A stretch of DNA of 63,078 nt, filler included, from Bipalium vagum (taxonomy: Eukaryota): the NCBI GenBank assembly GCA_037834085.1. It is 3 parts of 3 records of this genome, joined end to end, with 100 filler letters (N's around TTAATTAATTAA, not from the genome) between each part and the next. Parts side by side here need not be neighbours in the genome. Positions count along the whole stretch, not along the records: positions 44,364 to 63,078 come from JBBMKC010021946.1; 2 more parts are not named here. One strand, written 5' to 3'. Below, one piece after another: positions 46,730-63,020 of the stretch; the first letter of the stretch is position 1, and the number at the start of each line of letters is the position of its first letter. A program made the position numbers and the translations under genes. A model generated the notes under the pieces. That model was not told the DNA's origin. It saw nothing but the letters and a program-made list of their open reading frames with translations, and searched no databases.

Positions 46730-49700
46730 CTATACAGAGGTCATAGACATATCATTTAATCCTTGTAAGACCATCACATCCGGATTGAATTTAGTTACAG
46801 CCAGGATGGCTTTGATCAATATCTAAATCAAAATAAATTCTTTCTCTTCAAAAATAACAAACTTCATCTTCCTCGTCGAAATCCTTGGAATAACCTTGAA
46901 TTCTTAGGAGACTATTGCGGGTGACCTATTTGAAAATAAAGCAAATAAGTAAATAATGTTCGAACTGGAATCGTTCTTAATAATATTTTGATTAAAATTA
47001 ATTAATATTAACACTGCCGAATCGACTTTTGAACAAAAACTCAATTCTTTTAAAAAAATAAAAACCTCGTCTTCACATCTGTCTATTGTATTTCTATTCA
47101 CATTGGTAGTTGTCTTTATTTTTGTCTTTTTTATAGTTCTGGTTACTGTTCTACCGTGCTGATCTATATAAGTCTCTGTTGATATTTCCGGATCGCCCTT
47201 TTCAACTGTCTACAATTTAATTAACGAATTAAATCAATAATGAAGAATTAAATCTTTCATTTGTCACATGACTAAATTAAAAAATATATTAAAACCTGGT
47301 AGCTTTCTTCAATTTCTGATCTTTCTTGCATTTTTATAAAAGCATGTCTTTCCTCTTCTTCTTTTCTTAATTGTATTTCTCTTTGTCTTTCCTCCATTTC
47401 TAATTGCTCGCGGTATAATCTAAGTCTTTCCTCTTCTTCTTGCTCTTTTCTACGTCTTAATTCTTCCTCCCTTTCTTGCTGAAGTAATAATCGTCGTTCT
47501 TTTTCTTGTTTTTCTATTCTTTCTTTTTCCTTTAACATATTTAATTTTCTTTCTTCTTCTAGTTGAGCGTTTCTTTTAAATTTTTCTCTGGCTTGTCTGC
47601 GGAGCTCAAGAACATCTTCTTCCCGTTCAGTGAAAGGCCTATTGAAGAGCTATAGAAAATCTAATCAAATATTTTAAAATAAAAAATTCTAAACTGAAGG
47701 ATCCCTTTTCTTTGACTTTTCTGTATTCCCATTTGCTGCATAACACATCGCATTCCATTCATTCTAAATATTTGGAAAACAACAATAAAAGCTTAATAAC
47801 AAAAATCTAACTCCTGGATAAAATTCAAAAGGCCTGTTCCCAAAATTGAAATCTAGTGTATTGTTGACAAGACTTGCCGTTGGATAGAATGCTCTCAATT
47901 CAACTAAATCGTCTGGAATTGTATAAGCTTCCTTATATACTTGTCCATTCTTAGACCATTTGATAAGTTTGTTATCTAGATCCAGGAAGCATCCTATCAC
48001 ATCTCCTTTCATAAGAGGCTGAAATGATTGGCAATTTTGAATAATAAAGAAATTATAAATTATAAATTATAATTATAATTATAACTTAACCGTCAATTGT
48101 GATTTAATAAGAGATATAGTAACAGTGTTAGGTATAAAACAAGTCTTACTTCGCCATAGTTCTCTATTTCACCACCATTCATTTTTTTACCTTGATTACG
48201 TTTTATTCCGAAGCCATCATTATCAGCTCCATATCCAAAACCAGAACTATCATTTCCAAGATTTAAGCTTCCATCATCTGTTGCCCATCCAACTCTGACC
48301 AAACCATCTTCCACTGGTATGACTTCATAATAATATTTACCGGCGTCATATACTCCCTAAATGTATAATCATCATCAAAATATTTTAACGATAATTATAA
48401 TTTTTGTCAGTCAATTCAAATTTTCACTGTGAAAATATAAATAAAATTATTAAAGCTTCGTGGTTTCCATATTACATCAAAATGGAACATAATTCGAATA
48501 GGTTTATTTTAATGAAAATTTTAATTTTAATATATAATGACCTGAGCTATAAATGTTCGCAGATATAAAAAGGAGTCAAGTCGGAAATCAAAGCAGTGCC
48601 TATCTTACAATTTCGACAAATTTCTTTATATTTAAAGAAATATTATATCTCAAATAGTTTCGACTATGTAATCATGTAAGTGTAANNNNNNNNNNNNNNN
48701 NNNNNNNNNNNNNNNNNNNNNNNNNNNNNNNNNNNNNNNNNNNNNNNNNNNNNNNNNNNNNNNNNNNNNNNNNNNNNNNNNNNNNNNNNNNNNNNNNNNN
48801 NNNNNNNNNNNNNAACCAAATCCTAATCCTATATTTTTTGCTCTTGGCCAACAGGCTATAGATTTCACATTAAATAACCCTTTCTCATGATTTTTATTAA
48901 AATAAGCTTTATGTAAATAAATTAAGTCAGATATCCGCATGTATTACATTACTTTTCCCAGAGATGTCGACAGAATAATCGTCTTAGAATTAGGTTCTAT
49001 TGTTGTATATATGAATACAATTTGGAATTCTGAAAAGTCCGATCGATTAGAAAGTTAAACGGTGTTTCAAATAAGATCGAAGTATTTTAAACAAAGATTA
49101 TTTTTCATTAATAACAGTTGCGATAAGACGAAAAATGTCTTAAGCTATTTTGAAAGGCTTAAGTCCTGTGTGATCGACATTTTTTAATCTTGTTTTGAAG
49201 AAAAATTGATTAGATTGACACATTGAAAGTTTATTTTTGACTATTTGTCATTTAATCGGTTTAAGAAAGTTTGAAATTACGATACTCTCGAAAAAAAATC
49301 CATATTAAAAATTTTAATGAAATTTAGGATAACACAAGTTATGATAGGAAACAATACCTATTGATTAACAAAGATAGAGAAAGTCCTGAAATAATCGAAA
49401 CCAAAAAATGTTCCATTTTCTAGTTTTTTTAACAAAATATTTCTTTCAAACACTCCTTTGGTCTGATGATTTTATTTTGAAGAAAATTTAGTTAAAAAAA
49501 TTATTTTAAGTTTACGTGAAACTTAAACTTCTTCGACACCTTTCATATTACTGATAATCTATAAATAATATTTTTTATTTTAATTTGTTTAAGTATTTAT
49601 TTTATATTTAAACATTTTCATTTTATTTTTTAAAAATTACTTTCACAATTTTAAAAATTTGTAAAGGGAAAACTGCAAGGCATTGCAACATTACTTGTTT

Positions 49701-50542
49701 AGTTGTCTCTGTAGTTTGCATAGATCTGAGGCATTTAAATAAACGTTAATAATCCACCAGACATCAATATTTTGTCTATTGACCAATAGTATCACAACTA
49801 TCCTTTGATCTCACACAATAAGTACAATTTAACTAAATACGTATTTTTCGTCTTGAAGCTATTGATCGCACATTATTTTTTTATTCTCCTCATCATATTG
49901 GTATGCAACTATTATACAAGTCTTTTTACTCAAGGTCCACATACTTTGATTATAACTATATATAAATATTGAGAGTTCTCTTAAATCACTCTGCATTTCT
50001 GTTTATCTTTATTTCGTTTCAAGTCTTGAAAAAGAAAAAAGTATGCATCTCATTAAACTTATTATTTATTTACTTCTTATTTAATTATTTCTCTCTGACG
50101 CCACAGTTTACCGTCACTGATGAGAACGTATTTTAGTTTGTTGATTCCATTTTGGGTATTAACGGCTTCAACCTCTTAAAAAAGTAATATTTTATTACGC
50201 TTAAACTTAAATATATTTTATAAATAATTATATTTATAACATAGGTGAAAGAAACTCCAGATGATGAATTTAAATTTCTTGTTTTATTAAAATCAACTAA
50301 AAGTTCTTTCACCTTTGGTATGGGATTTTCAAAGTCTTTTCTAACGTTAACGTTGTTTAATATAAAAACTTAAGCTTTAAAATTTGCTATCCTTTATTAT
50401 TATTTTTGCAAAACAGGGGCAAATTTTTAATGCAGTTGTCTTTGAAAAGTTATCGAACTTTTTTACCAGAAAAGATGAAACAAGAGTTCCAAACACAAAA
50501 TATGGAAAGAATAATTGCTACAATGGAATGACCTTCGTTTAT

Positions 50543-50596
<54 letters not shown>

Positions 50597-51547
50597 GGTT
50601 TATAAAATTTATAAATTTTACTTTGTTCGCTCGGCATCCATTCCATTCACCATTTAATTTAGACTGAGCCGTATAACCATTTCCTGATACTTCTGTTCCT
50701 GTTGTCGTGTCAAATGGGTTTAATCTCCAACCGGTATGTTTGTTTAATAATGTATTATTATCTGGAGCTTGAGAAAGAGGAACCCAATCCCGTTTAGGCA
50801 AATATGATAATGGCTCATCTCCAAAATTGAAAATAACTCGACCATCCTTAACACATGAAGCTAGGAAAGGGAAATAAATGTTTTTCAAAAGAAATTATTT
50901 ACTTGGAAAGAAAGCTTCGTCTTTCAAATCCTCAGGAATTTTAAATGCTGGTGCAAATGTGGCACCATTTTTACTCCATTGAATGTTACCATTATCAAAA
51001 TCAATATAACACCCTATAACATCTCCTTCTTTAATAGGTTGACCATATTCATTTTCTTGTCCATTATTACGTTTAAATCCGCAATCCAGATCTTGTCCTT
51101 TCTGATCGTTTCCATAGCCAAAACCCTTTTTATCTGATCCAAGATCTAAACTTGCTTCATTAGTTGACCAACCTAGCCGTATCAATCCATCTTCTACTAC
51201 TTTTCCTTCATAATAAAATTTCCCCGGACCTCTTATTCCTTTATTACTTCTGCATCCCTATAATTATTATTAATAATCTAATTATATATTTATACTTAAT
51301 ATACTTGCCAACCAGAACCCTTATTTGCAGCTACATCTAATCCTGTTGGATCTATACCAATTTCAGGAGTACAATCATCGATTGACATCTGCCAATATTC
51401 CTTAGGCAAATCAGGCCTTTCTACATTGTAAAGGGGATCTTCCAAATTAAATACTTCGTCATTACTTGCATAAGGAGCGATTCCACTTGGTGAAAACATA
51501 TCTGATAATAATAACAATAAAAATATAATAATAAAATAATGAAACAA

Positions 51548-51618
<71 letters not shown>

Positions 51619-54600
51619 AAATAGAATGTGTAATCTAAACAGAAAAACATTTTTAAAATTAAACTACTATATATTTTTAAAGGTTTGGATTTTTAAACGT
51701 TTAGTCTGACATCCTTATTTTAAAAAAGGATATCCAGATGTGAAAATAATTAAGTGATGCTTGTTATTGATTGAAAGCCAGTTTTGGTGATATATCTCAT
51801 AGATGCTGATAGAATTTGCTTACACTATCAATAATGGAAAACTAGACAAACTTTAAAACTAGTGACATTAAATCATTAACTCGTACTTATGAATACTTCA
51901 AAGTTTAGAAAATGCAAAGATTTCATCAAACTCTTTTATTAATAAATGTGGAAGTGTCAAGATTTCTCTACGAAAGAAATAAAAATTGCGATATTAAGTA
52001 AATATTAATCTCTTACTGTCCTTTTCTCTTCTTTGAGTCGGCATTCTTCTAACTTTCGGTTGTGGTCTACTAAGAATAATATTAGGGGTTGATGGTGTGT
52101 TATCGGGAACTGAGTGCGTTGTAGAAGTCTGATAAACATATTTACGAGTTCCAAACCCAGGTATTAACTGAGCTTTCCTTGGATTTTCTGCATCGACCAT
52201 ACTATTAAGAATAATTAATTTACTTATTTTAAATTACTCGAAATGTATTACCGGAAAAATGTGTGATGTTCAACGCACGCTTTCCACAGTCTTTTAGCTA
52301 AGCGATGATTACCGCATTTGAATTCCAGAATTTTCTCTTTCCTCGTGATTTCTGTAGCTCGGAGTGTAAGAAAAAAACTTTTATTTTTGTATGTCAATTT
52401 TAATATCTGAGGCCATGAATGTCGAATAACTCTAATCCTATTCCGATACAAGAGAATTCCACTATGATAGACTCCCACACTCATCTCATCATTATTACTG
52501 TTCTATAATTTGGAAAATAATTTTCATTAAAATTAAGTAATTTTCATTCTCGACAGTACTAGGCTGTAACACACCAATTATAGTTAAAGAATATTTTATT
52601 TTAATTCATATAACAGAAACATTTTATTGTTTAAAACATCAGCCAAAATTCAATCAGCATATAATGATAACTGAAACACTAAAACAGTGAGAATTGTTTG
52701 GAGCTCTATAAGATATACTGGTAAGAGTTACATAAAACAATATATATTTTATGCTTAATAATAGTTATAATAGGTATAAATTGTAGTCATGACACCATGA
52801 TTCTATAAAAATAAGAAATCATGCGTATTATTTTATCTAAAAATCAGGTAATGATCAAAGTAACAAAAGTTTCAATGTTAATGATGCACGAGAGCATATT
52901 TTTAATAATTTAGATATTGTCTGGAATTATGCTGGAATATTAGAGAATATTATGAAACATAATATTTGAATAACTGCAATGCTGGTCTTAAAATGAAAAG
53001 ATAATATCAACCATCAACAGATAAAAAAAGTTTAGAAGGTATAGAGAAATGGTAAAATGAAAATACAATGGAAAGTCGAAAATTATTTTATCAAAATTTC
53101 AAAATATAAATTGAAAAAAATCCATAAAAATCAGAAAATCCAAAATCTAGAATTAATAACAATGAAAATCATTACAGTGTTGTTCAATTAATTAATTATT
53201 TTTTCTTTTAAGACCATAATATTATTGAAAGTCTTATTATCATAAATACTTTGGAACTCGAGCAGTCTTCAAAACTAGTTCAATGTTCCTGAATTGCTTG
53301 CCAAAGAAAAGGGAGTAAAATGTTTTCCAAGAGTTTCATGTAAACAGTTTTTCCTTCATCTTAGAAATAATTGTAATTTTTTAAGATATATAATGCGGAA
53401 TCAAAATTTTAGAGTTTATTTTTCCGAATTTTTCTTTCTTTGTATGTCACATTGAATGTAAATATTTATAATCTGGATTAAATAATTGTGATTACCTTTT
53501 AAGAAAAATATCAATCCATTTAATTTAATTTAGATATATAAAATTTTATTGCTAGTTGTTCTTATGTAGTATTACTATTTATATTTTATATTTATTATAT
53601 GTTAAAAATACCCCAAATTATAAATTAATCAATAAAAAATTTAGTTTTGATTTATTAAACATAAATGAAATGAAAGATGCGATATATTTAACTTTTCTTC
53701 AAAAATCAAGTTACTAAACTTTTAATATTAAGCAGTTTAACCATATTTATCTGAAAAATATTATATTATATTATATATATTATATAATATTTAAATATAT
53801 TTTTGACCAATATCTTTTTATAGACTAACTAAATCAACAAAAGATCAAAGTTTCCATAATATTTTTATAGTTTGATTCTTATTAAGTCATAAATATCTGA
53901 TGACATATTCTAATAAAAAAAGTATTAAAAATCAAAAATTTTAAGTAGCCGCTGTGTAATAACAAAATTTCAGTTTTAAAAGGTCGATAATTAGTAGTTT
54001 TTGATTCTTATTTTGTGCTATTATTTTGGTCAAAAGGGAAATATTAAAGAGCTTCCAAAATGGATGAAAAATGAAAATATATTTACATTCTTTTTTTCTA
54101 CGGATTGATTTTGCATTTTCTTATGTGAATTTTGTGAAGCTTTCATAGTCAATTATCATTCTTCAAAAAATCCTAATGGTAAATCAAAGGTTTCACTATA
54201 ACAAATTCAATTTTAAAGTAAATTAATTTAATTATTTTATTATTAAATGAAAAAGACTAATTGGAGTCGAGATATTTGGACAAATACCGAGGTCAATAAA
54301 TTTAATTATAACCAATTTTAAGATCTTAAGTGTTCTATTTCAATTAACATTTTCATCAGTGTAATATTAGTAAACTCATTATTATATGTAACATGTATCC
54401 CACCTCGGTTCTTAATAAAGAATTGTAAATATATACATAAGTTGGTTTCTTTAGGTAAACATATCCTCATTTGTAATAATAGAGAATCTTACATATACTG
54501 TATTTCTACCCAGAGTACTTCGTAATGTATATGATCTCTGTAATAAATCTTCCATAGAAAAATATTGAAATTGAGATTTTAATTTGTTTTAATCAAATTA

Positions 54601-55267
54601 TGTAGTCACAGCTTTTATCCTGACAGCATTAAATAGAAACTTTTTAAAATATATTTGCTATTTTACACTGATAACTTGTTTCAAATGAACAAATATTACT
54701 AAACAAGATTTGTAGAAATATTATTAATTGTCTATTGTTGGATCCATTAATTGATTTTTTCGAAACATGACATCACATAATATTTAATTACCTTTGTGAT
54801 TAAGCATTGGCATATGTGTGTAAATGTGTGCAAATGTATGCCTATTATTAATCATTTCTATTATCAAACTAATACTAAAGAGAGATCACTACAATTAAAC
54901 TTCAGTGTCATCATCATCGATTTATGATTATAGAGAATGCTGGTCATTGAGTAAAGTATTTTTCGAAAACCTATTATTTCAGTAAACAACAAAAATAATA
55001 ATAACAATGATCAGATGATTTTGATTATTATTAATTTTGGAGTCATCATTTTAAGCATTTCGTACTTATATTACATTCTGGAAATAAATATTAGAAATGA
55101 AAAACGTGTTAGAAAATAAATTTCAAGAACTCTAAGGAAAAATAGAATGGAGATGGAAAAATTACCTTGACTTTGTGCATGTCAACTCCATACATACCAA
55201 GTTTCATTGCATTCCACAAAAATATTCGATCCGCTTCTTCAGGTGATTGTAATCTGATGTAATAAGG

Positions 55268-55302
<35 letters not shown>

Positions 55303-56971
55303 TAATAATAATAATAAATAATAATAATAATAATAAGTAACAATAATTAGTTACAAACAGTTTCTAAATTATATTATAATAAAAAGAAATTAATTTTTTA
55401 TTGTCACTTTTCTTACGACATTAAAAATAAAATCACTGATCTTCTAGAGATATGATTATCGCGTGACATCCTGAACGACAAGGATAGATAACACTTTAAA
55501 AAATCTAATCACTTTATTCAAACCACTTGGAAAAATTTTAATAAAATCAGAACAGAAACAATATGTACAGGTAAATAAAGTATTTATCAAGACTGTTCAA
55601 GGCCAAAGTTATAGATTACTGCTGGAATTCTAAGTAAAAGATTTTATACGGCTATTACAATTGTGAATATCCCTTATGATTATTTGTGCAGACTCTAATA
55701 TAATATTTGTAATAATAAAATAATATATCAAATATTATATGTTATGCATAAATAGATAAACTTTATTTCATTGGCATTTTGTAAAAATTAAAAACCAGAG
55801 ATTATTCTTGAGTATACATGAAATAAATGAGTATCGAAATAAATAATGAAGATAAGTAAAATAAAATTGGATTATAGTTTTATCTATTAATAGAGCAGTT
55901 TGAATCTTTTAAAATTGTTTTAACTTATGTTTTCATATTATTAAATTATGCTTTCAGACAAGCAAGACAGGTTTGAAATATATCACAAATACTGGCTGAA
56001 AAATCTCACTTATGTTAACCATAAAAAACAGACTTGATAATTTTAAAATCATCTTAGATTGATAAATTACAATATATTTTCGATATAATAACTCTTAGAT
56101 AAGAATATTTTAGCTGAAATATAGATAGAGAATAGCGAAATACCTAAATTTTACAAGTGGAAATGTTTAATAATAAAATTCATTTTTTTCAAATTTCTAT
56201 TTATAAATGTAAAATAAAATTTTAAAAATTGAGGTTTTGAAAATAAGTTCGTTTTTTATAAAATTCTTTTTAATCTTTGTTATGAGAATAGATTTATGAC
56301 TTCCAGACATAAATTTTCTTTTTATAAATTTTAAATTCCGTTTATTAATTTATTAATCCTCCAATATTAATCTATATTTCCTTTATAATTGATATACAAT
56401 AAAATATTGATTTTTGTATGTATTAATATTTTATTTTTAAACTGAAAAATAATTAATGATATTGGAAACTAATAATGTGGAACAAGTTATCTTAACAAAA
56501 GGAGCTTAAATCATAAGAAAACTTTTACAAACTGATTACCAAATATAAATTATAAATGATTTTATTAAAAAGAATTTCTTGGTAATCTTCTTTGTATCTT
56601 TTTATAAAATGTTCCTAATAGTTCAATAAATTTAAAAAGTTTACAGACATGTACTTTTTTTATTAGATTTGGCATAGCACTAAAAAGATAATGCAAATTA
56701 TAATATGAGGTTTCAAGATTTCTTTTAAACATATTTATTTTAATGGTACGGCAAAGAAGTAATATTTTTTGATCTCACTTCCAAAAATCATTATCACAGA
56801 TGCGTAATATTAAGTCTATTATTAATCTTTAAAAAATTTTATTACTATTTATTTATTGCAATATTTTATTACTATTTGCAATAAAGATACACTAATTTTA
56901 CATCGATTATAGTCAGAGATGTTTAATTGTAAACTAGTTTCTGTATAAAAGAATAGTCAACACTAGCAATT

Positions 56972-57034
<63 letters not shown>

Positions 57035-60000
57035 TTATCATTATTATTTTCAAGTTTCTGTTAAAATTTACTATGATAAATGTAATTTATTCCTTGTACA
57101 AAATAAATAAAAATTAACTGTAGAAATCGTAAAACATTAGTTTATATTAATTTAATTTATATATTTTTTTATTTATTTTAAGTTTTATTAATTTAATAAT
57201 GTTTATAAACTGAGGTGTGAGTTCAGCAATTACAATTTATTGAAATCGAAAAAATTATTGCCAAATAATTAATATTTTAAGAATAATCTATACATGAAAT
57301 GATAATCATACAAACATAAATTTAATACGTATTTTAATAAAAAAGCTCATACCCGACTTGCTTATGCAATTCACAGATTCTTATTAATAATTCATCAGTT
57401 TGTAAGGCTTTTGGAGCAAAGGGCATGTTTCTGATATATTCTATTCCACTGTGAACTTTAGGATCATAATCCCCAGCTTCTGATTGAACTGCATAAGCTC
57501 CAAGAAGAACAATTACATTAAAAGAAGCTGGCAATCTGTATGTTTTCACATTTAACTTTTAGTAATAAATTCAGAACTTTACTCACTTTCCTTCAACCAT
57601 GTCTTGTCGGACTTGCAAGCAAAAAAAATATTTTGTTAATTCTTCTTCCAAATCCTCAACATGTGGTGGATAAAATTTTACTTGAAAATCAAAAACCCAG
57701 TTATTTTCTAAAGATGTTGTCATTATAAAATAACCTCAAACGATAAATTTACTTCCAATTTGTTCTGATATCTTTTTATCCATATTGAGCCAGAACTAAA
57801 TAATAGCCAAATAACGATTAATAATAATAATTATTCTTATTATAATTATAAATAATAATAATAATTAATATTATTCTTATTACAATTATAAATAATAATA
57901 ATATTTTTAAATAAATAGCATTTAAAAAAAACAATAAAATAATAATAATTAAAATAAAATAAAAATAAAATAATTTTAAAAATAAAAAAAGAATTTATTT
58001 TAATCAATAAATAATATTTTTTAATATTAATATAATATTATTTTAAAAAAAATTTATTTTTAGTGAATTTATTAATTTAATTTGAAATTTTTTTTATAGA
58101 AGTTGATCTTTATGTCCTTATTTGTTATAAATTAAAATTAGTAAAACAGAAAGCATGAAATATTATTTTATATTAATAGTAATATAATAAAAATTTTATT
58201 TATTAATTATAATTACTATTTTTAAATCTATAAGTTAAAATTGGATGATCAAAAGAACACAAAACATAAAAATAAATTTGGAATGGTTTTGGTTTAATAT
58301 ATCACGAGATTCACAGACCTCAGCTTCCACATAGGTCCTCTCAATATCCAGGCTTTTCTTAGCTTATTAGCATTCATTGGTAATGTATCATGGTAATTAT
58401 TGTAACTGACAATATAAATTTTCATGAAAACCCTTCAAATGCGGATTAGAACATATAAAAATAAATAAATCTGAGTATTAATTTCCAACTTTAATTTAAA
58501 GTATACAGAACAGAAAAGGTACTGACTGCCATACAGAATTTATTTACATTAAATATTGTAAAAAGAAAATTCTTTCATTTGCAATTTTTAGTAAAAATTT
58601 ACATCAAGAAAACTTAAATTAACTTTCGTAAATAAAAGATAAATTTCGTGAAAAGAAAAATTCTAAATCACACTGTCAAAAAATATAAAATCAGGTGTAG
58701 CACAATAGTGTAAATATTTAAATAAATCATTTGTTCAAATACACAATGCACATTTTAGAGATTATTTTTGTCATAAAATACAATTGAAATCTTTAAAAAA
58801 TGAAACTACTCGTAATTTTATTATTTCAAGTGTTTTTAATGATTTTTAAAGTGTTACACATTTTAAGAAATGTGAAATTTAATTTTTTTCAAAAATACAC
58901 AAAAATTTAAAACAATATTTAATTGAACATTGCGCCAATATGGAATATCTTTTATAAATACAGACTCGATTCATATTTCACAGAAATAAATGTTTAAAAG
59001 AATTGAATTTTAGTTGTATGGAGAAAGAATTTGTGAAAAATAAATAATTATCATTCACAAAAAATTAAAATAAAATATGATAAATAATTTTTTTAAAAAA
59101 AGTTCAAACGTTCGGCTTAACCACCTATCCAATAGACGCCTTAAGCAATATGAGTAATTAAAAAGTTAATTAAATTATTGAAGAAGATATATTCGTCTGG
59201 TCAGATTCTTTTATTAGTTGATTGGAGTAGTGATATGTTTAAGACTTCAATCTTAAAAATAGAATATATTTTACATTGCATTGTTATTTAATTTGTCACA
59301 GTACTTATGAATATGTTGGAAGTGTTCTGCATACCATTATTGTTTGAGATAATGTTATAAAATCGATAAATGTCACTGAATAATTGTGATATTGGCTGTC
59401 TGTGTGTTGTGACTGTGACTTAGATCTCATCAGCGGCCAGCTAATCTGGTTGTAATTTAATCTTTACCAAGACATTCATTTTTCTATTAGAAAACATATG
59501 AAATGTAGACAAATGAAATTAACAAAGATCTGATGAGAACTTAGAGACCATAGATAGACTACTTACCCAAATTCTCAATGATTTATCAATGTACTTAATT
59601 CCAAAATACATTCTTTCATTGAGATCCAGTTGATCACAGACTCTTTCGAAAAGATGTTGACCTAATGATCCTGACTGAAATATAAATATTTATAATTTTA
59701 ATTATTTTAAATGGTTTATAATTTAAAATACATCAATCTCATAAGTTTCCTCAACTCCATCCAGCTTTGTCACTAAGCATTTTTCCATTTTTCCCGTTGG
59801 CTTATACTCGCTTGGCTTAGCACCTTTTCTTTGATAGGTGCCATAACGTTGACTGAGCGTATTATTACTTTGAAATTTGTTGAAATTTCCAGAATTTCGA
59901 TTAATTGAGGCATTGCTACCCATTCTTAGGCTTGCATAATACTCATGTTTTGGAAGCGCATGTGTCTCTTCAATTTGCCCATTATCTAATTCACGTCGAT

Positions 60001-60090
60001 GGACTTTCTTATCCTATATTAATATGCATGTTTAAAACTTATAAATCTTATAGTTTTTAAACTTACCAATGTCAGATTTTGAGAGCTCAT
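46730..60090 (-). CDS. Protein 4.1/Coracle-like FERM protein with two DDX1-type SPRY domains, an E/R-rich coiled coil and a 4.1-like C-terminal domain; 19 exons, ~1070 aa
   Basis: Exons 60067-60090, 59732-60013, 59567-59674, 57753-57795, 57587-57707, 57353-57535, 55166-55253, 52252-52502, 52017-52201, 51305-51501, 50903-51257, 50622-50860, 48150-48356, 47812-48018, 47695-47763, 47296-47649, 47066-47209, 46863-46925, 46730-46822 sum to 3213 nt in frame, all GT-AG. FERM motifs (GQHLFERVCDQLDL..YFGI, VKFYPP, LGAYAVQSEAGDYD, LGMYGVDMH, AKRLWKACVEHHTFFR); SPRY x2 (WxGCRxNKG..GKxYYE..DGLxRxGW..LxLG.D..GFGYG..GDVIGC..KWSKNG..FNFG); C-terminus EEDEILIKAILAVTKFNPDVMV. Confidence 0.9.
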
Positions 60091-60989: not shown

Positions 60990-63020
60990 TTAGAAGACCT
61001 AATGCAGTGACCGAAAGACAAGCATTCCCAATGCCAAACGTTGACGAAGTGTTAGATGAGTTAGTTGGAGCACATTATTTAAACTCAATTGACCTGGGTA
61101 CTTCTTATTATCAAGTTGAATTGGACAAAAATTAGCAAGAAAAGACTGCTTTTTCTACAAAAATGGACAGTGCTGTTTTAATACAATGCTATTTGACATT
61201 GCAGTGGCACCAGGAACGTTTCAAGAGGTAATGACAAAGGTCATCGATAAAATCAATGGACCTATGGTATATCTAGATGATATTCTGGTTTTCACGAGCA
61301 GTTTGGAAAGACATTACAATGCCTTAAATCAGGTTTTGATGAGCATCACAGAATCTGGCTTAAGAATTAATCTCAAGAAATGCCAATTATTATTAATATT
61401 AAAGGACAAAGTCAAATTCTTCGGCCATATTGTAAACAAAAACGGTGTTCTGACAGATCAATCAAAAAAAGATTCTATCCAAACATTTACGCAACCAAAA
61501 TGTGTTAAAAACCTGAGGAGCTTTTTGGGTATCTGCAATTACTATAGACGATTTATAAACGGGTATGCACAGAAAGCAAAAGCTATGGAACAATTATGCA
61601 GAATTAATAATAAGAAATTTATTTGGACACCAGAAGTAAATGAGGTTTTTGAAGAACTAAGTATATCCTGCCCAATATTATGCTTTCCAGATATGAATAA
61701 AGAATTCATTCTTGATACTGATGCGAGTTTCGACACAATTGGGGCAGTTTTGTCACAGAAAGATTCAAATGGACATGAAAGAGTGGTAGCATATGGCTCG
61801 TATTCAATGAATGCTCATGAAAAAGATTACTGTGTAATACGGAAAGAGCTGCTGGCTATGTATTACTTCTGTAACCATTATTCATATGGGAAACGGTTCA
61901 CATTATGTACGGATCATAAAGCAATAATCTTTATGATAGAAACAAAAAAACCAATTACTTCACAATTTCAAACGTGGATCAATTATCTCAGTAGTCTAGA
62001 CATGAGACTAGAATACAGGAAAGGAATCGCACATTCAAATGTAGACATGCTTTCGAGACTGAAGTGTGATACATGATCACAATGTCAAACACAGCATGAA
62101 GAACCAAAATTGGGAAGAGTTCGAACAAAGATTTTAGACGTGGTAACAATAGAAAGGCATCAGTTAGCGGAAAGAATTAAAAGGTGCGAAGATAAGACGT
62201 TTCAAGATATCGTTTGGTCGGCTCATCATATGCTGGCACATGCTGGAGCTGAAAAAGTTGTGTATTATATGAAAGACAAGTGCTCAATTCCAATTTTGAA
62301 GGAAAAAGCTCAGGAGATAAATAAAACCTGTGGAGTTTGTCAGAGATATAAAGTTTTCACAACGAGGACCAAGGAATTGGTACAGAAAGTAGAAGCGTCA
62401 GAACTTTTTGAAGACATATATCTAGATATATGTGGGCCTTTAAGAGAAACTACCGGAAGAAAAAAATATATCCTTGGTATTATAGATAAATATAGCAAAT
62501 ATATTTCTTTGACAGCGATTGTAAAACAAGATGAAAGCTCCGTGCAAAAGATAATTATGAATAATTGGATACTGAAGTTTGGAAATCCAAAAGCGTGACA
62601 TGCAGATTGTAGTAAATTGTTTGAATCTAAAAGCATGAGGGATTTTGCAGAGAGAGTTAATGCCAATCTCTTTTTTACGAGTCCATACCATCACAACACA
62701 AATGGCCAAATAGAAAGACAATTTAGAACCGTGCGCGATTTGTTGAACGCAACTTTAAGTGAAAGAGAGACAAATGACTGGGCCGACATCCTGCTGGAAG
62801 TAGAATTTCCTCTCAATTCTACAGAAAAGAATTAAAATAAGTTCGGCTGAAATGGTGTTTGGTAGAAAGATCTCCAGAAATAGAATATAAAAGGCCGCTG
62901 AGAAACAGATTTCAAAAACAAAAAGAAAATATAAAGAGGACATTTGCCGTAGGAGAATAAGTGCTAGTGAAGGCCGAAACTCGAGGAAAAGAAAATGAAA
63001 GATATTGGGTTGTGGAATAA
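60990..63020 (+). mobile_element. Decayed Ty3/gypsy LTR-retrotransposon pol (RT-RNase H-integrase), 5' truncated
   Basis: NAVTERQAFPMPNVDEVLDEL..IDL..YYQV, YLDDILV, LRSFLGICNYYRRFI, FILDTDAS..GAVLSQ, KELLA..TDHKAI, HHCC zinc finger (H-HMLAH-AG..CGVCQ), integrase core (LDICGP, PYHHNTNGQIER). RT-RH-IN order; stops and frameshifts. Confidence 0.95.

What the first reader, a model, noticed from the sequence alone, without database searches (positions are those of the whole stretch)
47695..52502. Protein 4.1/Coracle-like gene that has captured two tandem DDX1-type SPRY domains
Seen: FERM and FERM-adjacent exons splice in phase, with no assembly gap at the junction (52017 to 51501), into two SPRY domains, then a long E/R coiled coil and a 4.1-CTD-like end. 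The 19 exons give one 3213-nt frame. Established: canonical 4.1/Coracle proteins are FERM-FA-(SAB)-CTD without SPRY. The SPRY sequences here follow the DDX1 SPRY pattern (WxGCRxxKG, GWST..ASLDLG.D..GFGxG, IGCYxDxDxG, SKNG, FNFG..P...V.LS.AP). Inference: a lineage-specific chimera in which an RNA-helicase interaction domain was shuffled into a membrane-cortex/septate-junction scaffold. I do not know whether this architecture is already annotated in related species.
Basis: partly seen in the sequence, partly recalled or inferred. Interest (0 to 1): 0.75.

Follow-up and report, generated by a model that had tools for sequence, protein, structure and literature searches.

The report
Flatworm protein 4.1 with two SPRYs
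This is an intact gene for a membrane-skeleton adaptor of the protein 4.1 family that carries two DDX1-like SPRY binding modules in its middle, a layout shared by flatworms in general and already present, unstudied and often misnamed, in public databases.

Summary
The gap 48686-48813 lies inside the intron between exons 50860-50622 and 48356-48150. Relatives align across that junction without a missing residue.

Pfam finds FERM_N/M/C and two SPRY domains. The nearest solved structures are 4.1-like protein 3 for the FERM and the DDX1 SPRY, 2.2e-27 against 9.5e-8 for the next family.

The gene is not a one-off chimera. 38 of the 40 best relatives carry FERM plus SPRY. All named ones are flatworms: trematodes, cestodes, a monogenean and free-living Macrostomum. 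Five full-length relatives sit on contigs too short to hold introns. DDX1 is the next-nearest SPRY.

The FA and CTD parts are degenerate: no Pfam hit, only profile-profile matches. No RNA run was on offer for this genome, and six paper searches found no study. The scan had already reported the same kind of gene on two other pieces of this genome. Verdict: new member of a known, unstudied family; moderate interest.

The parts
60067..60090 (-). Possible first coding exon (8 codons from an ATG, donor GTAAGT)
   Evidence: Frame and splice signal only; no homology support. An alternative start is the ATG at 59923.
59732..60013 (-). Exon with the N-terminal region and start of the FERM N lobe (internal ATG at 59923-59921)
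   Evidence: Aligns to P0004 residues 75-118 and to P0005 and P0003.
59567..59674 (-). FERM_N exon
   Evidence: Pfam FERM_N 9.4e-10; AG/GT, phase 0.
57753..57795 (-). Small FERM exon (43 nt)
   Evidence: 14-residue matches to P0010, P0003, P0005 and P0008 in collinear position.
57587..57707 (-). FERM N/M-lobe exon
   Evidence: Weak FERM_M match, 0.09.
57353..57535 (-). FERM_M exon
   Evidence: Pfam FERM_M 4.1e-4; 60-72% identity to relatives.
55166..55253 (-). FERM_M exon (end of the M lobe)
   Evidence: 52-71% identity to relatives.
52252..52502 (-). FERM_C exon
   Evidence: Pfam FERM_C 1.2e-24. Best solved relatives: Band 4.1-like protein 3 at 1.4e-25 and 4.1R at 1.7e-22.
52017..52201 (-). 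Degenerate FERM-adjacent (FA-like) exon
   Evidence: No Pfam hit. Conserved in 43 family proteins directly after FERM_C. The family's region aligns to the canonical FA at 73% probability, controls 0.2% or less.
51305..51501 (-). Linker plus N-terminal lead strands of SPRY module 1
   Evidence: Its last 38 residues are conserved just before SPRY1 in relatives. On its own it has no significant PDB match.
50903..51257 (-). Core of SPRY module 1
   Evidence: Pfam SPRY 1e-16; DDX1 SPRY 4xw3 at 2.2e-27.
50622..50860 (-). Single exon holding the end of SPRY1 (to about 50730) and the lead strands of SPRY2 (from about 50744)
   Evidence: Residues 3-43 match DDX1 chain 164-204 and residues 39-79 match DDX1 chain 20-57.
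48686..48813 (.). Assembly gap, inside the intron 50621-48357
   Evidence: The flanking exons are phase 0 and adjoin without a missing residue in 5 of 5 relatives.
48150..48356 (-). SPRY module 2, first half
   Evidence: Pfam SPRY 6e-6. Sits inside the SPRY2 clade, 100/97.
47812..48018 (-). SPRY module 2, second half
   Evidence: Pfam SPRY 8.7e-10. Sits inside the SPRY2 clade, 100/97.
47695..47763 (-). End of SPRY2 plus a basic linker (23 codons)
   Evidence: Frame and splice signals only; no significant match to relatives.
47296..47649 (-). E/R/K-rich helical segment (118 codons), specific to this gene
   Evidence: E+R+K reaches 65% in 80 residues, against at most 34% in the same region of 15 relatives. 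Inclusion in the mRNA is not shown; skipping it keeps the frame.
47066..47209 (-). Conserved C-terminal motif exon (alternative donor after 47102)
   Evidence: Matches 21 family proteins near their C-termini at 5.5e-9 to 6.5e-4. No Pfam hit.
46863..46925 (-). Acidic exon (21 codons)
   Evidence: Frame and splice signals only.
46730..46822 (-). Last exon with a 4.1-CTD-like terminal motif and the stop codon
   Evidence: Weak matches to 5 family proteins. The family's C-terminus aligns to the canonical CTD end at 89.8% probability over 24 columns. No Pfam hit.

Best explanation
The locus is one intact, multi-exon, minus-strand gene, the flatworm form of the cortical adaptor protein 4.1. It has a 4.1-type FERM head that, by analogy with 4.1/Coracle, docks on the tails of membrane proteins. 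A degenerate FERM-adjacent stretch follows. Then come two complete tandem copies of the SPRY module otherwise known from the RNA helicase DDX1. Then comes a spacer, here an unusually E/R/K-rich helix, and a short tail that keeps the last motif of the 4.1 C-terminal domain. The two SPRYs sit between FA and CTD, where vertebrate 4.1 has its spectrin-actin-binding region. They most likely act as added protein-binding platforms that bring new partners to the membrane cortex. The fusion and the tandem duplication happened once, before Macrostomorpha, this genome's lineage and Neodermata split. The window's gene is a member of that family. Shown: exon structure, domain identities, collinearity with relatives, distribution. 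Inferred: single mRNA in this species, membrane-cortex role, partner-binding role of the SPRYs.
For: Exons, phases and splice signals. Pfam FERM_N/M/C and SPRY twice. The FERM_C is nearest to 4.1-like 3 and 4.1R. SPRY1 is nearest to the DDX1 SPRY at 2.2e-27, with RyR2 next at 9.5e-8. One exon matches both the end and the start of the DDX1 SPRY chain. In an exhaustive HMMER search of 1.84 billion representatives, the best long hits form a set apart from DDX1, and 9 of the 10 scanned have FERM plus two SPRY stretches. In one search, 38 of the 40 best relatives have FERM plus SPRY; 39 of the 40 are named and all are flatworms. They are followed by 21 DDX1 helicases (6.2e-39 to 7.1e-16) and then other SPRY families at about 1e-9. 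Window exons are collinear with single proteins. Full-length relatives lie on contigs too short for introns: 1105 aa on 3975 nt, 1088 on 3522, 1195 on 3841, 1217 on 4642, 1144 on 4380. In the tree, the SPRY2 clade holds all 21 family SPRY2 rows plus both window pieces at 100/97. The window's SPRY1 groups with 19 of 21 family SPRY1 rows at 97/80. A search with the FERM region gives 29 flatworm rows first and then canonical 4.1 of Lingula, Patella and Daphnia at about 50% identity. FA and CTD remnants.
Against: There is no transcript evidence from this species. Pfam FA, SAB and 4_1_CTD models hit nothing in the window or in relatives. Exons 47763-47695, 47649-47296 and 46925-46863 have no homology support. 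In the tree, the SPRY1 rows of Macrostomum and of one unnamed relative fall outside the SPRY1 clade on long branches. One hnRNPU-like outgroup row falls inside that clade. The position of the family among DDX1 SPRYs is unresolved. Function is inferred from domain families only. DDX1-conserved columns are kept at 72% (SPRY1) and 81% (SPRY2), but at 62% in the outgroups too, so this says little.
Confidence: 0.85

Rival explanations
1. Two neighbouring genes were read as one: a FERM-only 4.1-like gene ending after exon 52201-52017 and a separate SPRY-only gene starting at the ATG that opens exon 51501-51305.
For: If the intron after 52017 is retained, a stop follows 8 codons later. The first full codon of exon 51501-51305 is ATG. 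Some database models hold SPRYs without FERM: P0001, P0188, P0011. An earlier scan note on another piece of this genome proposes a stop-and-restart cassette between the halves (not tested).
Against: The junction is in phase with canonical signals. 38 of 40 relatives hold both halves in one protein. Five of them lie on contigs too short for introns. The ATG is not kept in the closest relative fragment, P0002. The SPRY-only models come from fragmented assemblies (contigs of 17-32 kb).
Confidence: 0.05
2. A recent chimera special to this species or genus.
For: The architecture is absent from canonical 4.1 proteins of other phyla: 0 of 89 canonical rows carry SPRY.
Against: The same architecture occurs in trematodes, cestodes, a monogenean and Macrostomum. 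The window's SPRY2 pieces sit inside a 100/97 clade with all 21 family SPRY2 rows.
Confidence: 0.02
3. An unexpressed or decaying extra copy. The scan reports the same kind of gene on two other pieces of this genome, so this copy could be a redundant paralogue or haplotype duplicate.
For: One search lists two other pieces with the same architecture. No RNA run was available. A decayed retroelement lies just upstream.
Against: All 19 exons are open with canonical splice sites. Identity to relatives is spread over the whole length. No frameshift or premature stop was seen.
Confidence: 0.08

Closest known systems
Canonical protein 4.1 / Coracle (EPB41 family; e.g. Lingula 'protein 4.1 homolog' P0224, Patella 'band 4.1-like protein 3' P0226)
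   Same: The three-lobed FERM domain is about 50% identical over the FERM region of a family member. For the window's FERM_C exon, the best solved relatives are 4.1-like 3 and 4.1R. The order is the same: FERM, then a post-FERM stretch, a variable middle and a C-terminal tail with the D.D.AL..AI..T..PD.SV-type motif.
   Different: Two DDX1-type SPRY modules lie in the middle. The FA and CTD are too diverged for Pfam's models. There is no SAB, although the invertebrate canonical 4.1 proteins listed lack a Pfam SAB hit too.
Flatworm FERM + 2xSPRY proteins in public databases (e.g. S. mansoni 'putative 4.1 G protein' P0179, E. multilocularis 'SPRY domain containing protein' P0176, Clonorchis 'Band 4.1-like protein 3' P0178, Macrostomum lignano P0193)
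   Same: The domain order is the same and the proteins are collinear over FERM, the FA-like stretch, the SPRY1 lead, SPRY1, SPRY2 and the C-terminal motif. The window's SPRYs fall in the family's SPRY1 and SPRY2 clades.
   Different: Identity is only about 40-60% in the SPRYs. The window's SPRY1 branches outside the neodermatan SPRY1 set (99/93). The 118-codon E/R/K-rich segment has no counterpart in 15 relatives.
SPRY domain of the DEAD-box helicase DDX1 (PDB 4xw3)
   Same: It is the best solved-structure match, covering the core (2.2e-27) and both the N-terminal lead and the C-terminal strands. DDX1 helicases are the next-best full-length hits after the family.
   Different: No DEAD or Helicase_C domain occurs anywhere in the gene. 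There are two copies in tandem in a FERM protein. Names such as 'DDX1, partial' on relatives P0006 and P0008 are misnomers.

Membership tests
Protein 4.1 family (EPB41/Coracle) | FERM domain with N, M and C lobes, closest to 4.1 among FERM families | tested here: met
   Pfam FERM_N 9.4e-10, FERM_M 4.1e-4 and FERM_C 1.2e-24 on separate exons. PDB ranking is 4.1-like 3 and 4.1R, ahead of PTPN3 and FARP. The nearest non-flatworm relatives of a family member's FERM are canonical 4.1 proteins.
Protein 4.1 family (EPB41/Coracle) | FERM-adjacent (FA) region, Pfam PF08736 | tested here: inconclusive
   No Pfam hit in the window exon or in any of the 31 family rows. hhalign of the family's post-FERM stretch against the canonical FA gives 73% probability, E 3.1e-5, over 52 columns; controls give 0.2% or less.
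Protein 4.1 family (EPB41/Coracle) | C-terminal domain, Pfam PF05902 (4_1_CTD) | tested here: inconclusive
   No Pfam hit, even at E up to 1. hhalign of the family C-terminus against the canonical CTD gives 89.8% over only the last 24 columns, and 78% for the other paralogue group; controls give 1.1% or less. The window's own last exon was compared by eye only.
Protein 4.1 family (EPB41/Coracle) | Spectrin-actin-binding domain, Pfam PF04382 | tested here: not met
   No hit. In one search this Pfam domain is listed only for vertebrate rows and some unnamed contigs, so it does not define invertebrate 4.1.
Flatworm FERM + tandem SPRY family (unnamed) | FERM followed by two tandem DDX1-type SPRY modules in one collinear protein | tested here: met
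   Exon-by-exon blastp is collinear with P0004, P0154, P0010, P0003, P0005 and P0008. The single mRNA in this species is inferred, not shown.
Flatworm FERM + tandem SPRY family (unnamed) | Each SPRY orthologous to the family's SPRY1 or SPRY2 | tested here: met
   SPRY2 clade at 100/97 with both window pieces. SPRY1 set at 97/80 with the window's exon, but with one long-branch outgroup row inside it and 2 of 21 family SPRY1 rows outside it.
Flatworm FERM + tandem SPRY family (unnamed) | Conserved C-terminal motif exon | tested here: met
   Exon 47209-47102 matches 21 family proteins near their C-termini.
DDX1 helicase | DEAD and Helicase_C domains around the SPRY insert | tested here: not met
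   No such Pfam hit in any exon. True DDX1 hits show DEAD + SPRY + Helicase_C.

The most novel reading that the evidence does not exclude
In flatworms the tandem DDX1-type SPRY pair took over the middle of protein 4.1 and keeps the still-unknown ligand specificity of the DDX1 SPRY. If so, it tethers an RNA-processing partner (or another DDX1-SPRY ligand) to the cell cortex, a phylum-specific link between membrane skeleton and RNA metabolism. In this lineage an added E/R/K-rich rigid helix would set the distance between the SPRY pair and the 4.1 tail.
Probability: 0.1. Interest if true: 0.65.

Novelty: new member of a known kind. Interest (0 to 1): 0.35.

Why it matters
Protein 4.1/Coracle is a core organiser of the membrane skeleton and of epithelial junctions. 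Among the proteins these searches listed, every flatworm 4.1-type FERM protein longer than about 600 residues carries two DDX1-like SPRY modules, and no canonical flatworm 4.1 appeared (one search lists only the best 120 of 5606, so absence is not shown). That is a clean, datable case of domain capture in an ancient scaffold, shared by free-living and parasitic flatworms, including major human and livestock parasites. It marks a phylum-specific protein that nobody seems to have studied. It also exposes wrong database names ('DDX1, partial'). For this window alone the result is modest: one more member, with a lineage-specific E/R/K-rich insert.

Tried and rejected
RNA evidence. The look-up of sequencing runs offered one run of unknown kind that holds 0.98 of the sampled words, introns included. 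It is therefore DNA and possibly the assembly's own source, so it is neither a transcript test nor independent support.

Pfam FA, 4_1_CTD and SAB. I scanned the exons at E up to 0.1 and up to 1 and found nothing. I then compared profiles of relatives instead.

The lead exon of SPRY1 against solved structures gave only chance-level hits.

Retention of DDX1-conserved columns. Of 33 columns, SPRY1 keeps 72% and SPRY2 81%, but the outgroups keep 62%, so this does not discriminate. The paper on the DDX1 SPRY structure names no patch residues in the text I read (section 3.4 and passages of PMC4555926), so I could not test the conserved surface patch.

Rooting the SPRY tree. The 10 outgroup rows did not form one side of any branch. 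I therefore claim no donor lineage within DDX1.

Literature. Six searches found no paper that describes a FERM-SPRY or 4.1-SPRY protein. PMC5818524 (one passage read) lists a 'SPRY domain containing protein' and a 'Band 4.1-like protein' in a Schistosoma mansoni vesicle proteome. PMC3166049 (passages read) lists three '4.1 G proteins' enriched in cercariae and never uses the word SPRY. I could not map either paper's accessions to the family.

I did not use the third large protein search to look for a canonical, SPRY-less 4.1 in flatworms. That absence is therefore not shown.

Full report
What is in the sequence. The piece is AT-rich, with 18-35% G+C per kilobase, and it carries a multi-exon gene on the minus strand. 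I read the strand directly and checked each exon on its own in scripts.

The FA-like exon ends at 52017 with one base of a codon, and exon 51501-51305 supplies the other two. The intron between them (52016-51502) contains a (TTA)n run but no N. Exon 48018-47812 ends in phase 0 at a GTTAGA donor, and exon 47763-47695 follows in phase 0.

A shorter variant (18 exons, 3063 nt) starts at the ATG at 59923 and uses the earlier donor after 47102. Both variants are open, and nothing here decides between them. I never joined the exons into a spliced sequence.

The gap. The only N run in the piece is 48686-48813. It lies in the intron between exon 50860-50622 and exon 48356-48150, 1935 nt after the donor and 329 nt before the acceptor. 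Both exons are phase 0. The text across the junction (GCRANK, then GVYDAGKYYYEV) mirrors the uninterrupted GCRSNKGIRGPGKFYYEG of the first SPRY. In 5 of 5 relatives checked, the two exons align to directly adjoining residues, for example P0004 711-795 and 796-865, or P0003 725-801 and 802-871. So the gap hides no coding sequence and does not affect the frame.

Domains. Pfam finds FERM_N (9.4e-10), FERM_M (4.1e-4) and FERM_C (1.2e-24), and SPRY in three exons (1e-16, 6e-6, 8.7e-10), which together make two domains. Against solved structures the FERM_C exon is closest to Band 4.1-like protein 3 (1.4e-25) and 4.1R (1.7e-22), ahead of PTPN3 (5.2e-16).

The core exon of SPRY1 is closest to the DDX1 SPRY domain 4xw3 (2.2e-27), and the next family, ryanodine receptor SPRY, scores 9.5e-8. 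Exon 50860-50622 matches two separate parts of the DDX1 chain. Its first 43 residues match the C-terminal strands (164-204), and its last 41 match the N-terminal lead (20-57). Each repeat is therefore a whole DDX1-type module, lead strands included. The lead exon of SPRY1 alone gives no significant structural match.

The intron positions of the two repeats differ. SPRY1 has introns before GCR and after FFP. SPRY2 has them after GCRANK, after YGE and after FYPG. This fits an old duplication.

Relatives. An exhaustive HMMER search of 1.84 billion representatives with the SPRY1 core exon gave 1136 hits at E up to 0.001 and 12 at E up to 1e-30. The best long hits, P0001 and P0003-P0011 (2.6e-86 to 6.4e-39), stand apart from the DDX1-length proteins that follow at about 1e-24. 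Nine of those ten have FERM plus two SPRY stretches; P0001 has three SPRY stretches only. Two of the following proteins that I scanned, P0018 and P0025, are DEAD + SPRY + Helicase_C.

A word-indexed search with the SPRY region of P0004 returned 63 proteins. The first 40 (E up to 1.1e-76) are the family. 38 of these 40 list FERM and SPRY Pfam domains. 39 of 40 are named, and all named ones are flatworms:
- Trematodes: Schistosoma, Trichobilharzia, Heterobilharzia, Fasciola, Fasciolopsis, Echinostoma, Calicophoron, Clonorchis, Opisthorchis, Paragonimus, Dicrocoelium.
- Cestodes: Echinococcus, Taenia, Hydatigera, Rodentolepis, Mesocestoides, Spirometra, Schistocephalus.
- The monogenean Cichlidogyrus.
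- The free-living Macrostomum lignano.

I checked the last two in the taxonomy; the class assignments of the rest are from my own knowledge. The next 21 rows are DDX1 helicases from many phyla (6.2e-39 to 7.1e-16). The last two are an RNF123-like and an AAA_33+SPRY protein at about 1e-9. Every FERM-bearing protein among the 216 then held belonged to the family, including a third, more diverged Mesocestoides protein, P0107.

One gene or two? The window's exons are collinear with single proteins of relatives through FERM, the FA-like stretch, the SPRY1 lead, SPRY1, SPRY2 and the C-terminal motif. Five full-length relatives lie on contigs too short to contain introns: 1105 aa on 3975 nt, 1088 on 3522, 1195 on 3841, 1217 on 4642 and 1144 on 4380. 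I take these to be assembled transcripts.

For this species there is no transcript evidence. The one run on offer holds the introns too, and read laying laid nothing. The single mRNA here is thus a strong inference, not an observation.

Origin of the SPRYs. I built a maximum-likelihood tree of 85 SPRY segments over 119 columns. The window's exons went in as three separate partial rows. The tree has few columns for so many rows, and the outgroup was not monophyletic. The main results are:
- All 21 family SPRY2 rows and both window SPRY2 pieces form one clade (100/97).
- The window's SPRY1 groups with 19 of 21 family SPRY1 rows (97/80). One long-branch hnRNPU-like row sits inside this set. The SPRY1 rows of Macrostomum and of its unnamed relative P0010 sit outside it on long branches.
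- SPRY1 and SPRY2 join each other (93/86) and sit among the DDX1 SPRYs, but the deep nodes are unresolved.
- The neodermatan SPRY1 rows exclude the window's (99/93). This suggests the window's species is a flatworm outside Neodermata.
- Within Neodermata two paralogue groups each unite trematodes with cestodes (100/99 for one; 94/63 and 96/88 for the other).

So the tandem pair predates the split of the sampled flatworms. DDX1 is the nearest outside relative by score, but I name no donor lineage.

Is it a 4.1? A search with the FERM region of family member P0180 listed the best 120 of 5606 hits. The first 29 rows are flatworm proteins, 28 of them with SPRY. Canonical 4.1 proteins follow (Lingula 2.1e-100, Patella, Daphnia, amphioxus, vertebrates) at about 50% identity. 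All 89 canonical rows list the FA domain and 86 list 4_1_CTD. None of the 31 family rows lists either, and no canonical flatworm 4.1 appears in the list.

Profile-profile comparison of relatives with canonical 4.1 gave the following:
- The post-FERM stretch aligns to FA at 73% probability (E 3.1e-5, 52 columns).
- The C-terminus aligns to the end of the CTD at 89.8% (E 1.8e-6, 24 columns; 78% for the other paralogue group).
- Reversed or mismatched controls reach 1.1% at most.

The window's FA-like exon is conserved in 43 family proteins, and its C-terminal motif exon in 21. Its last exon resembles the CTD-end consensus by eye only. I read this as the flatworm orthologue of 4.1 with eroded FA and CTD, and with the SPRY pair in the variable middle.

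What is special here. Exon 47649-47296 encodes 118 residues that are 30% E, 19% R and 8% K, reaching 65% E+R+K in 80 residues. The same region of 15 relatives reaches at most 34%. It could form a coiled coil or a single stable helix, but I ran no predictor. It has no homology support, and skipping it keeps the frame, so its presence in the mRNA needs RNA data.

How it most likely works. The following is inferred from what is established for the families. The FERM head binds the cytoplasmic tails of membrane proteins at the cortex or at junctions, as in 4.1/Coracle. The SPRY modules add protein-binding surfaces. [quoted passage not shown] The short CTD remnant may keep one 4.1 partner site. None of this is tested.

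Literature and earlier notes. Six searches found no paper describing this architecture. Two schistosome papers list proteins with fitting names but no domain analysis, and I could not map their accessions. After my own analysis I found that this scan had already reported the same kind of gene on two other pieces of this genome, with the same conclusion, plus an untested idea of a cassette exon between the halves.

Verdict. This is a new member of a flatworm-wide family that is annotated in databases but unstudied. Interest is moderate.

Noticed in passing
window 61007-62835, + strand: A decayed LTR-retrotransposon pol region lies just upstream of the gene's 5' end. Reverse transcriptase (1.7e-12), RNase H (9.5e-25) and integrase zinc-binding and core pieces are spread over at least four separate ORFs, so the frame is broken.
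   Followed up: partly
window 47296-47649, - strand: A 118-codon E/R/K-rich open exon (65% E+R+K in 80 residues) with no counterpart in 15 relatives. It may be a lineage-specific helical spacer or a frame-neutral false exon in purine-rich DNA.
   Followed up: partly
relatives P0006 (Clonorchis) and P0008 (Cichlidogyrus): The public names 'ATP-dependent RNA helicase DDX1, partial' and 'DEAD box helicase 1, partial' are attached to proteins that have FERM and SPRY domains but no helicase domain.
   Followed up: yes
relatives in the tree; P0107: Neodermata have two paralogue groups of the FERM-SPRY gene, each shared by trematodes and cestodes. Mesocestoides has a third, more diverged copy, P0107. 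The scan also lists two further copies on other pieces of this genome.
   Followed up: partly
window 51545-51625, 50545-50600, 55265-55340 and about 56950-57060, - strand: Long (TTA)n/(ATT)n microsatellites lie in introns and translate as runs of L, I, Y or N in the six-frame listing.
   Followed up: no
window 59906-59923, - strand: If the internal ATG at 59923 is the start, the protein begins MGSNAS. That fits the N-myristoylation pattern as I recall it (no tool used). The motif is not seen at the start of relative P0010.
   Followed up: no
window 51257/51305, 50903/50860, 50622/48356, 48150/48018 and 47812/47763: The two SPRY repeats share no intron position. This fits an old duplication followed by independent intron gain or loss.
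   Followed up: no
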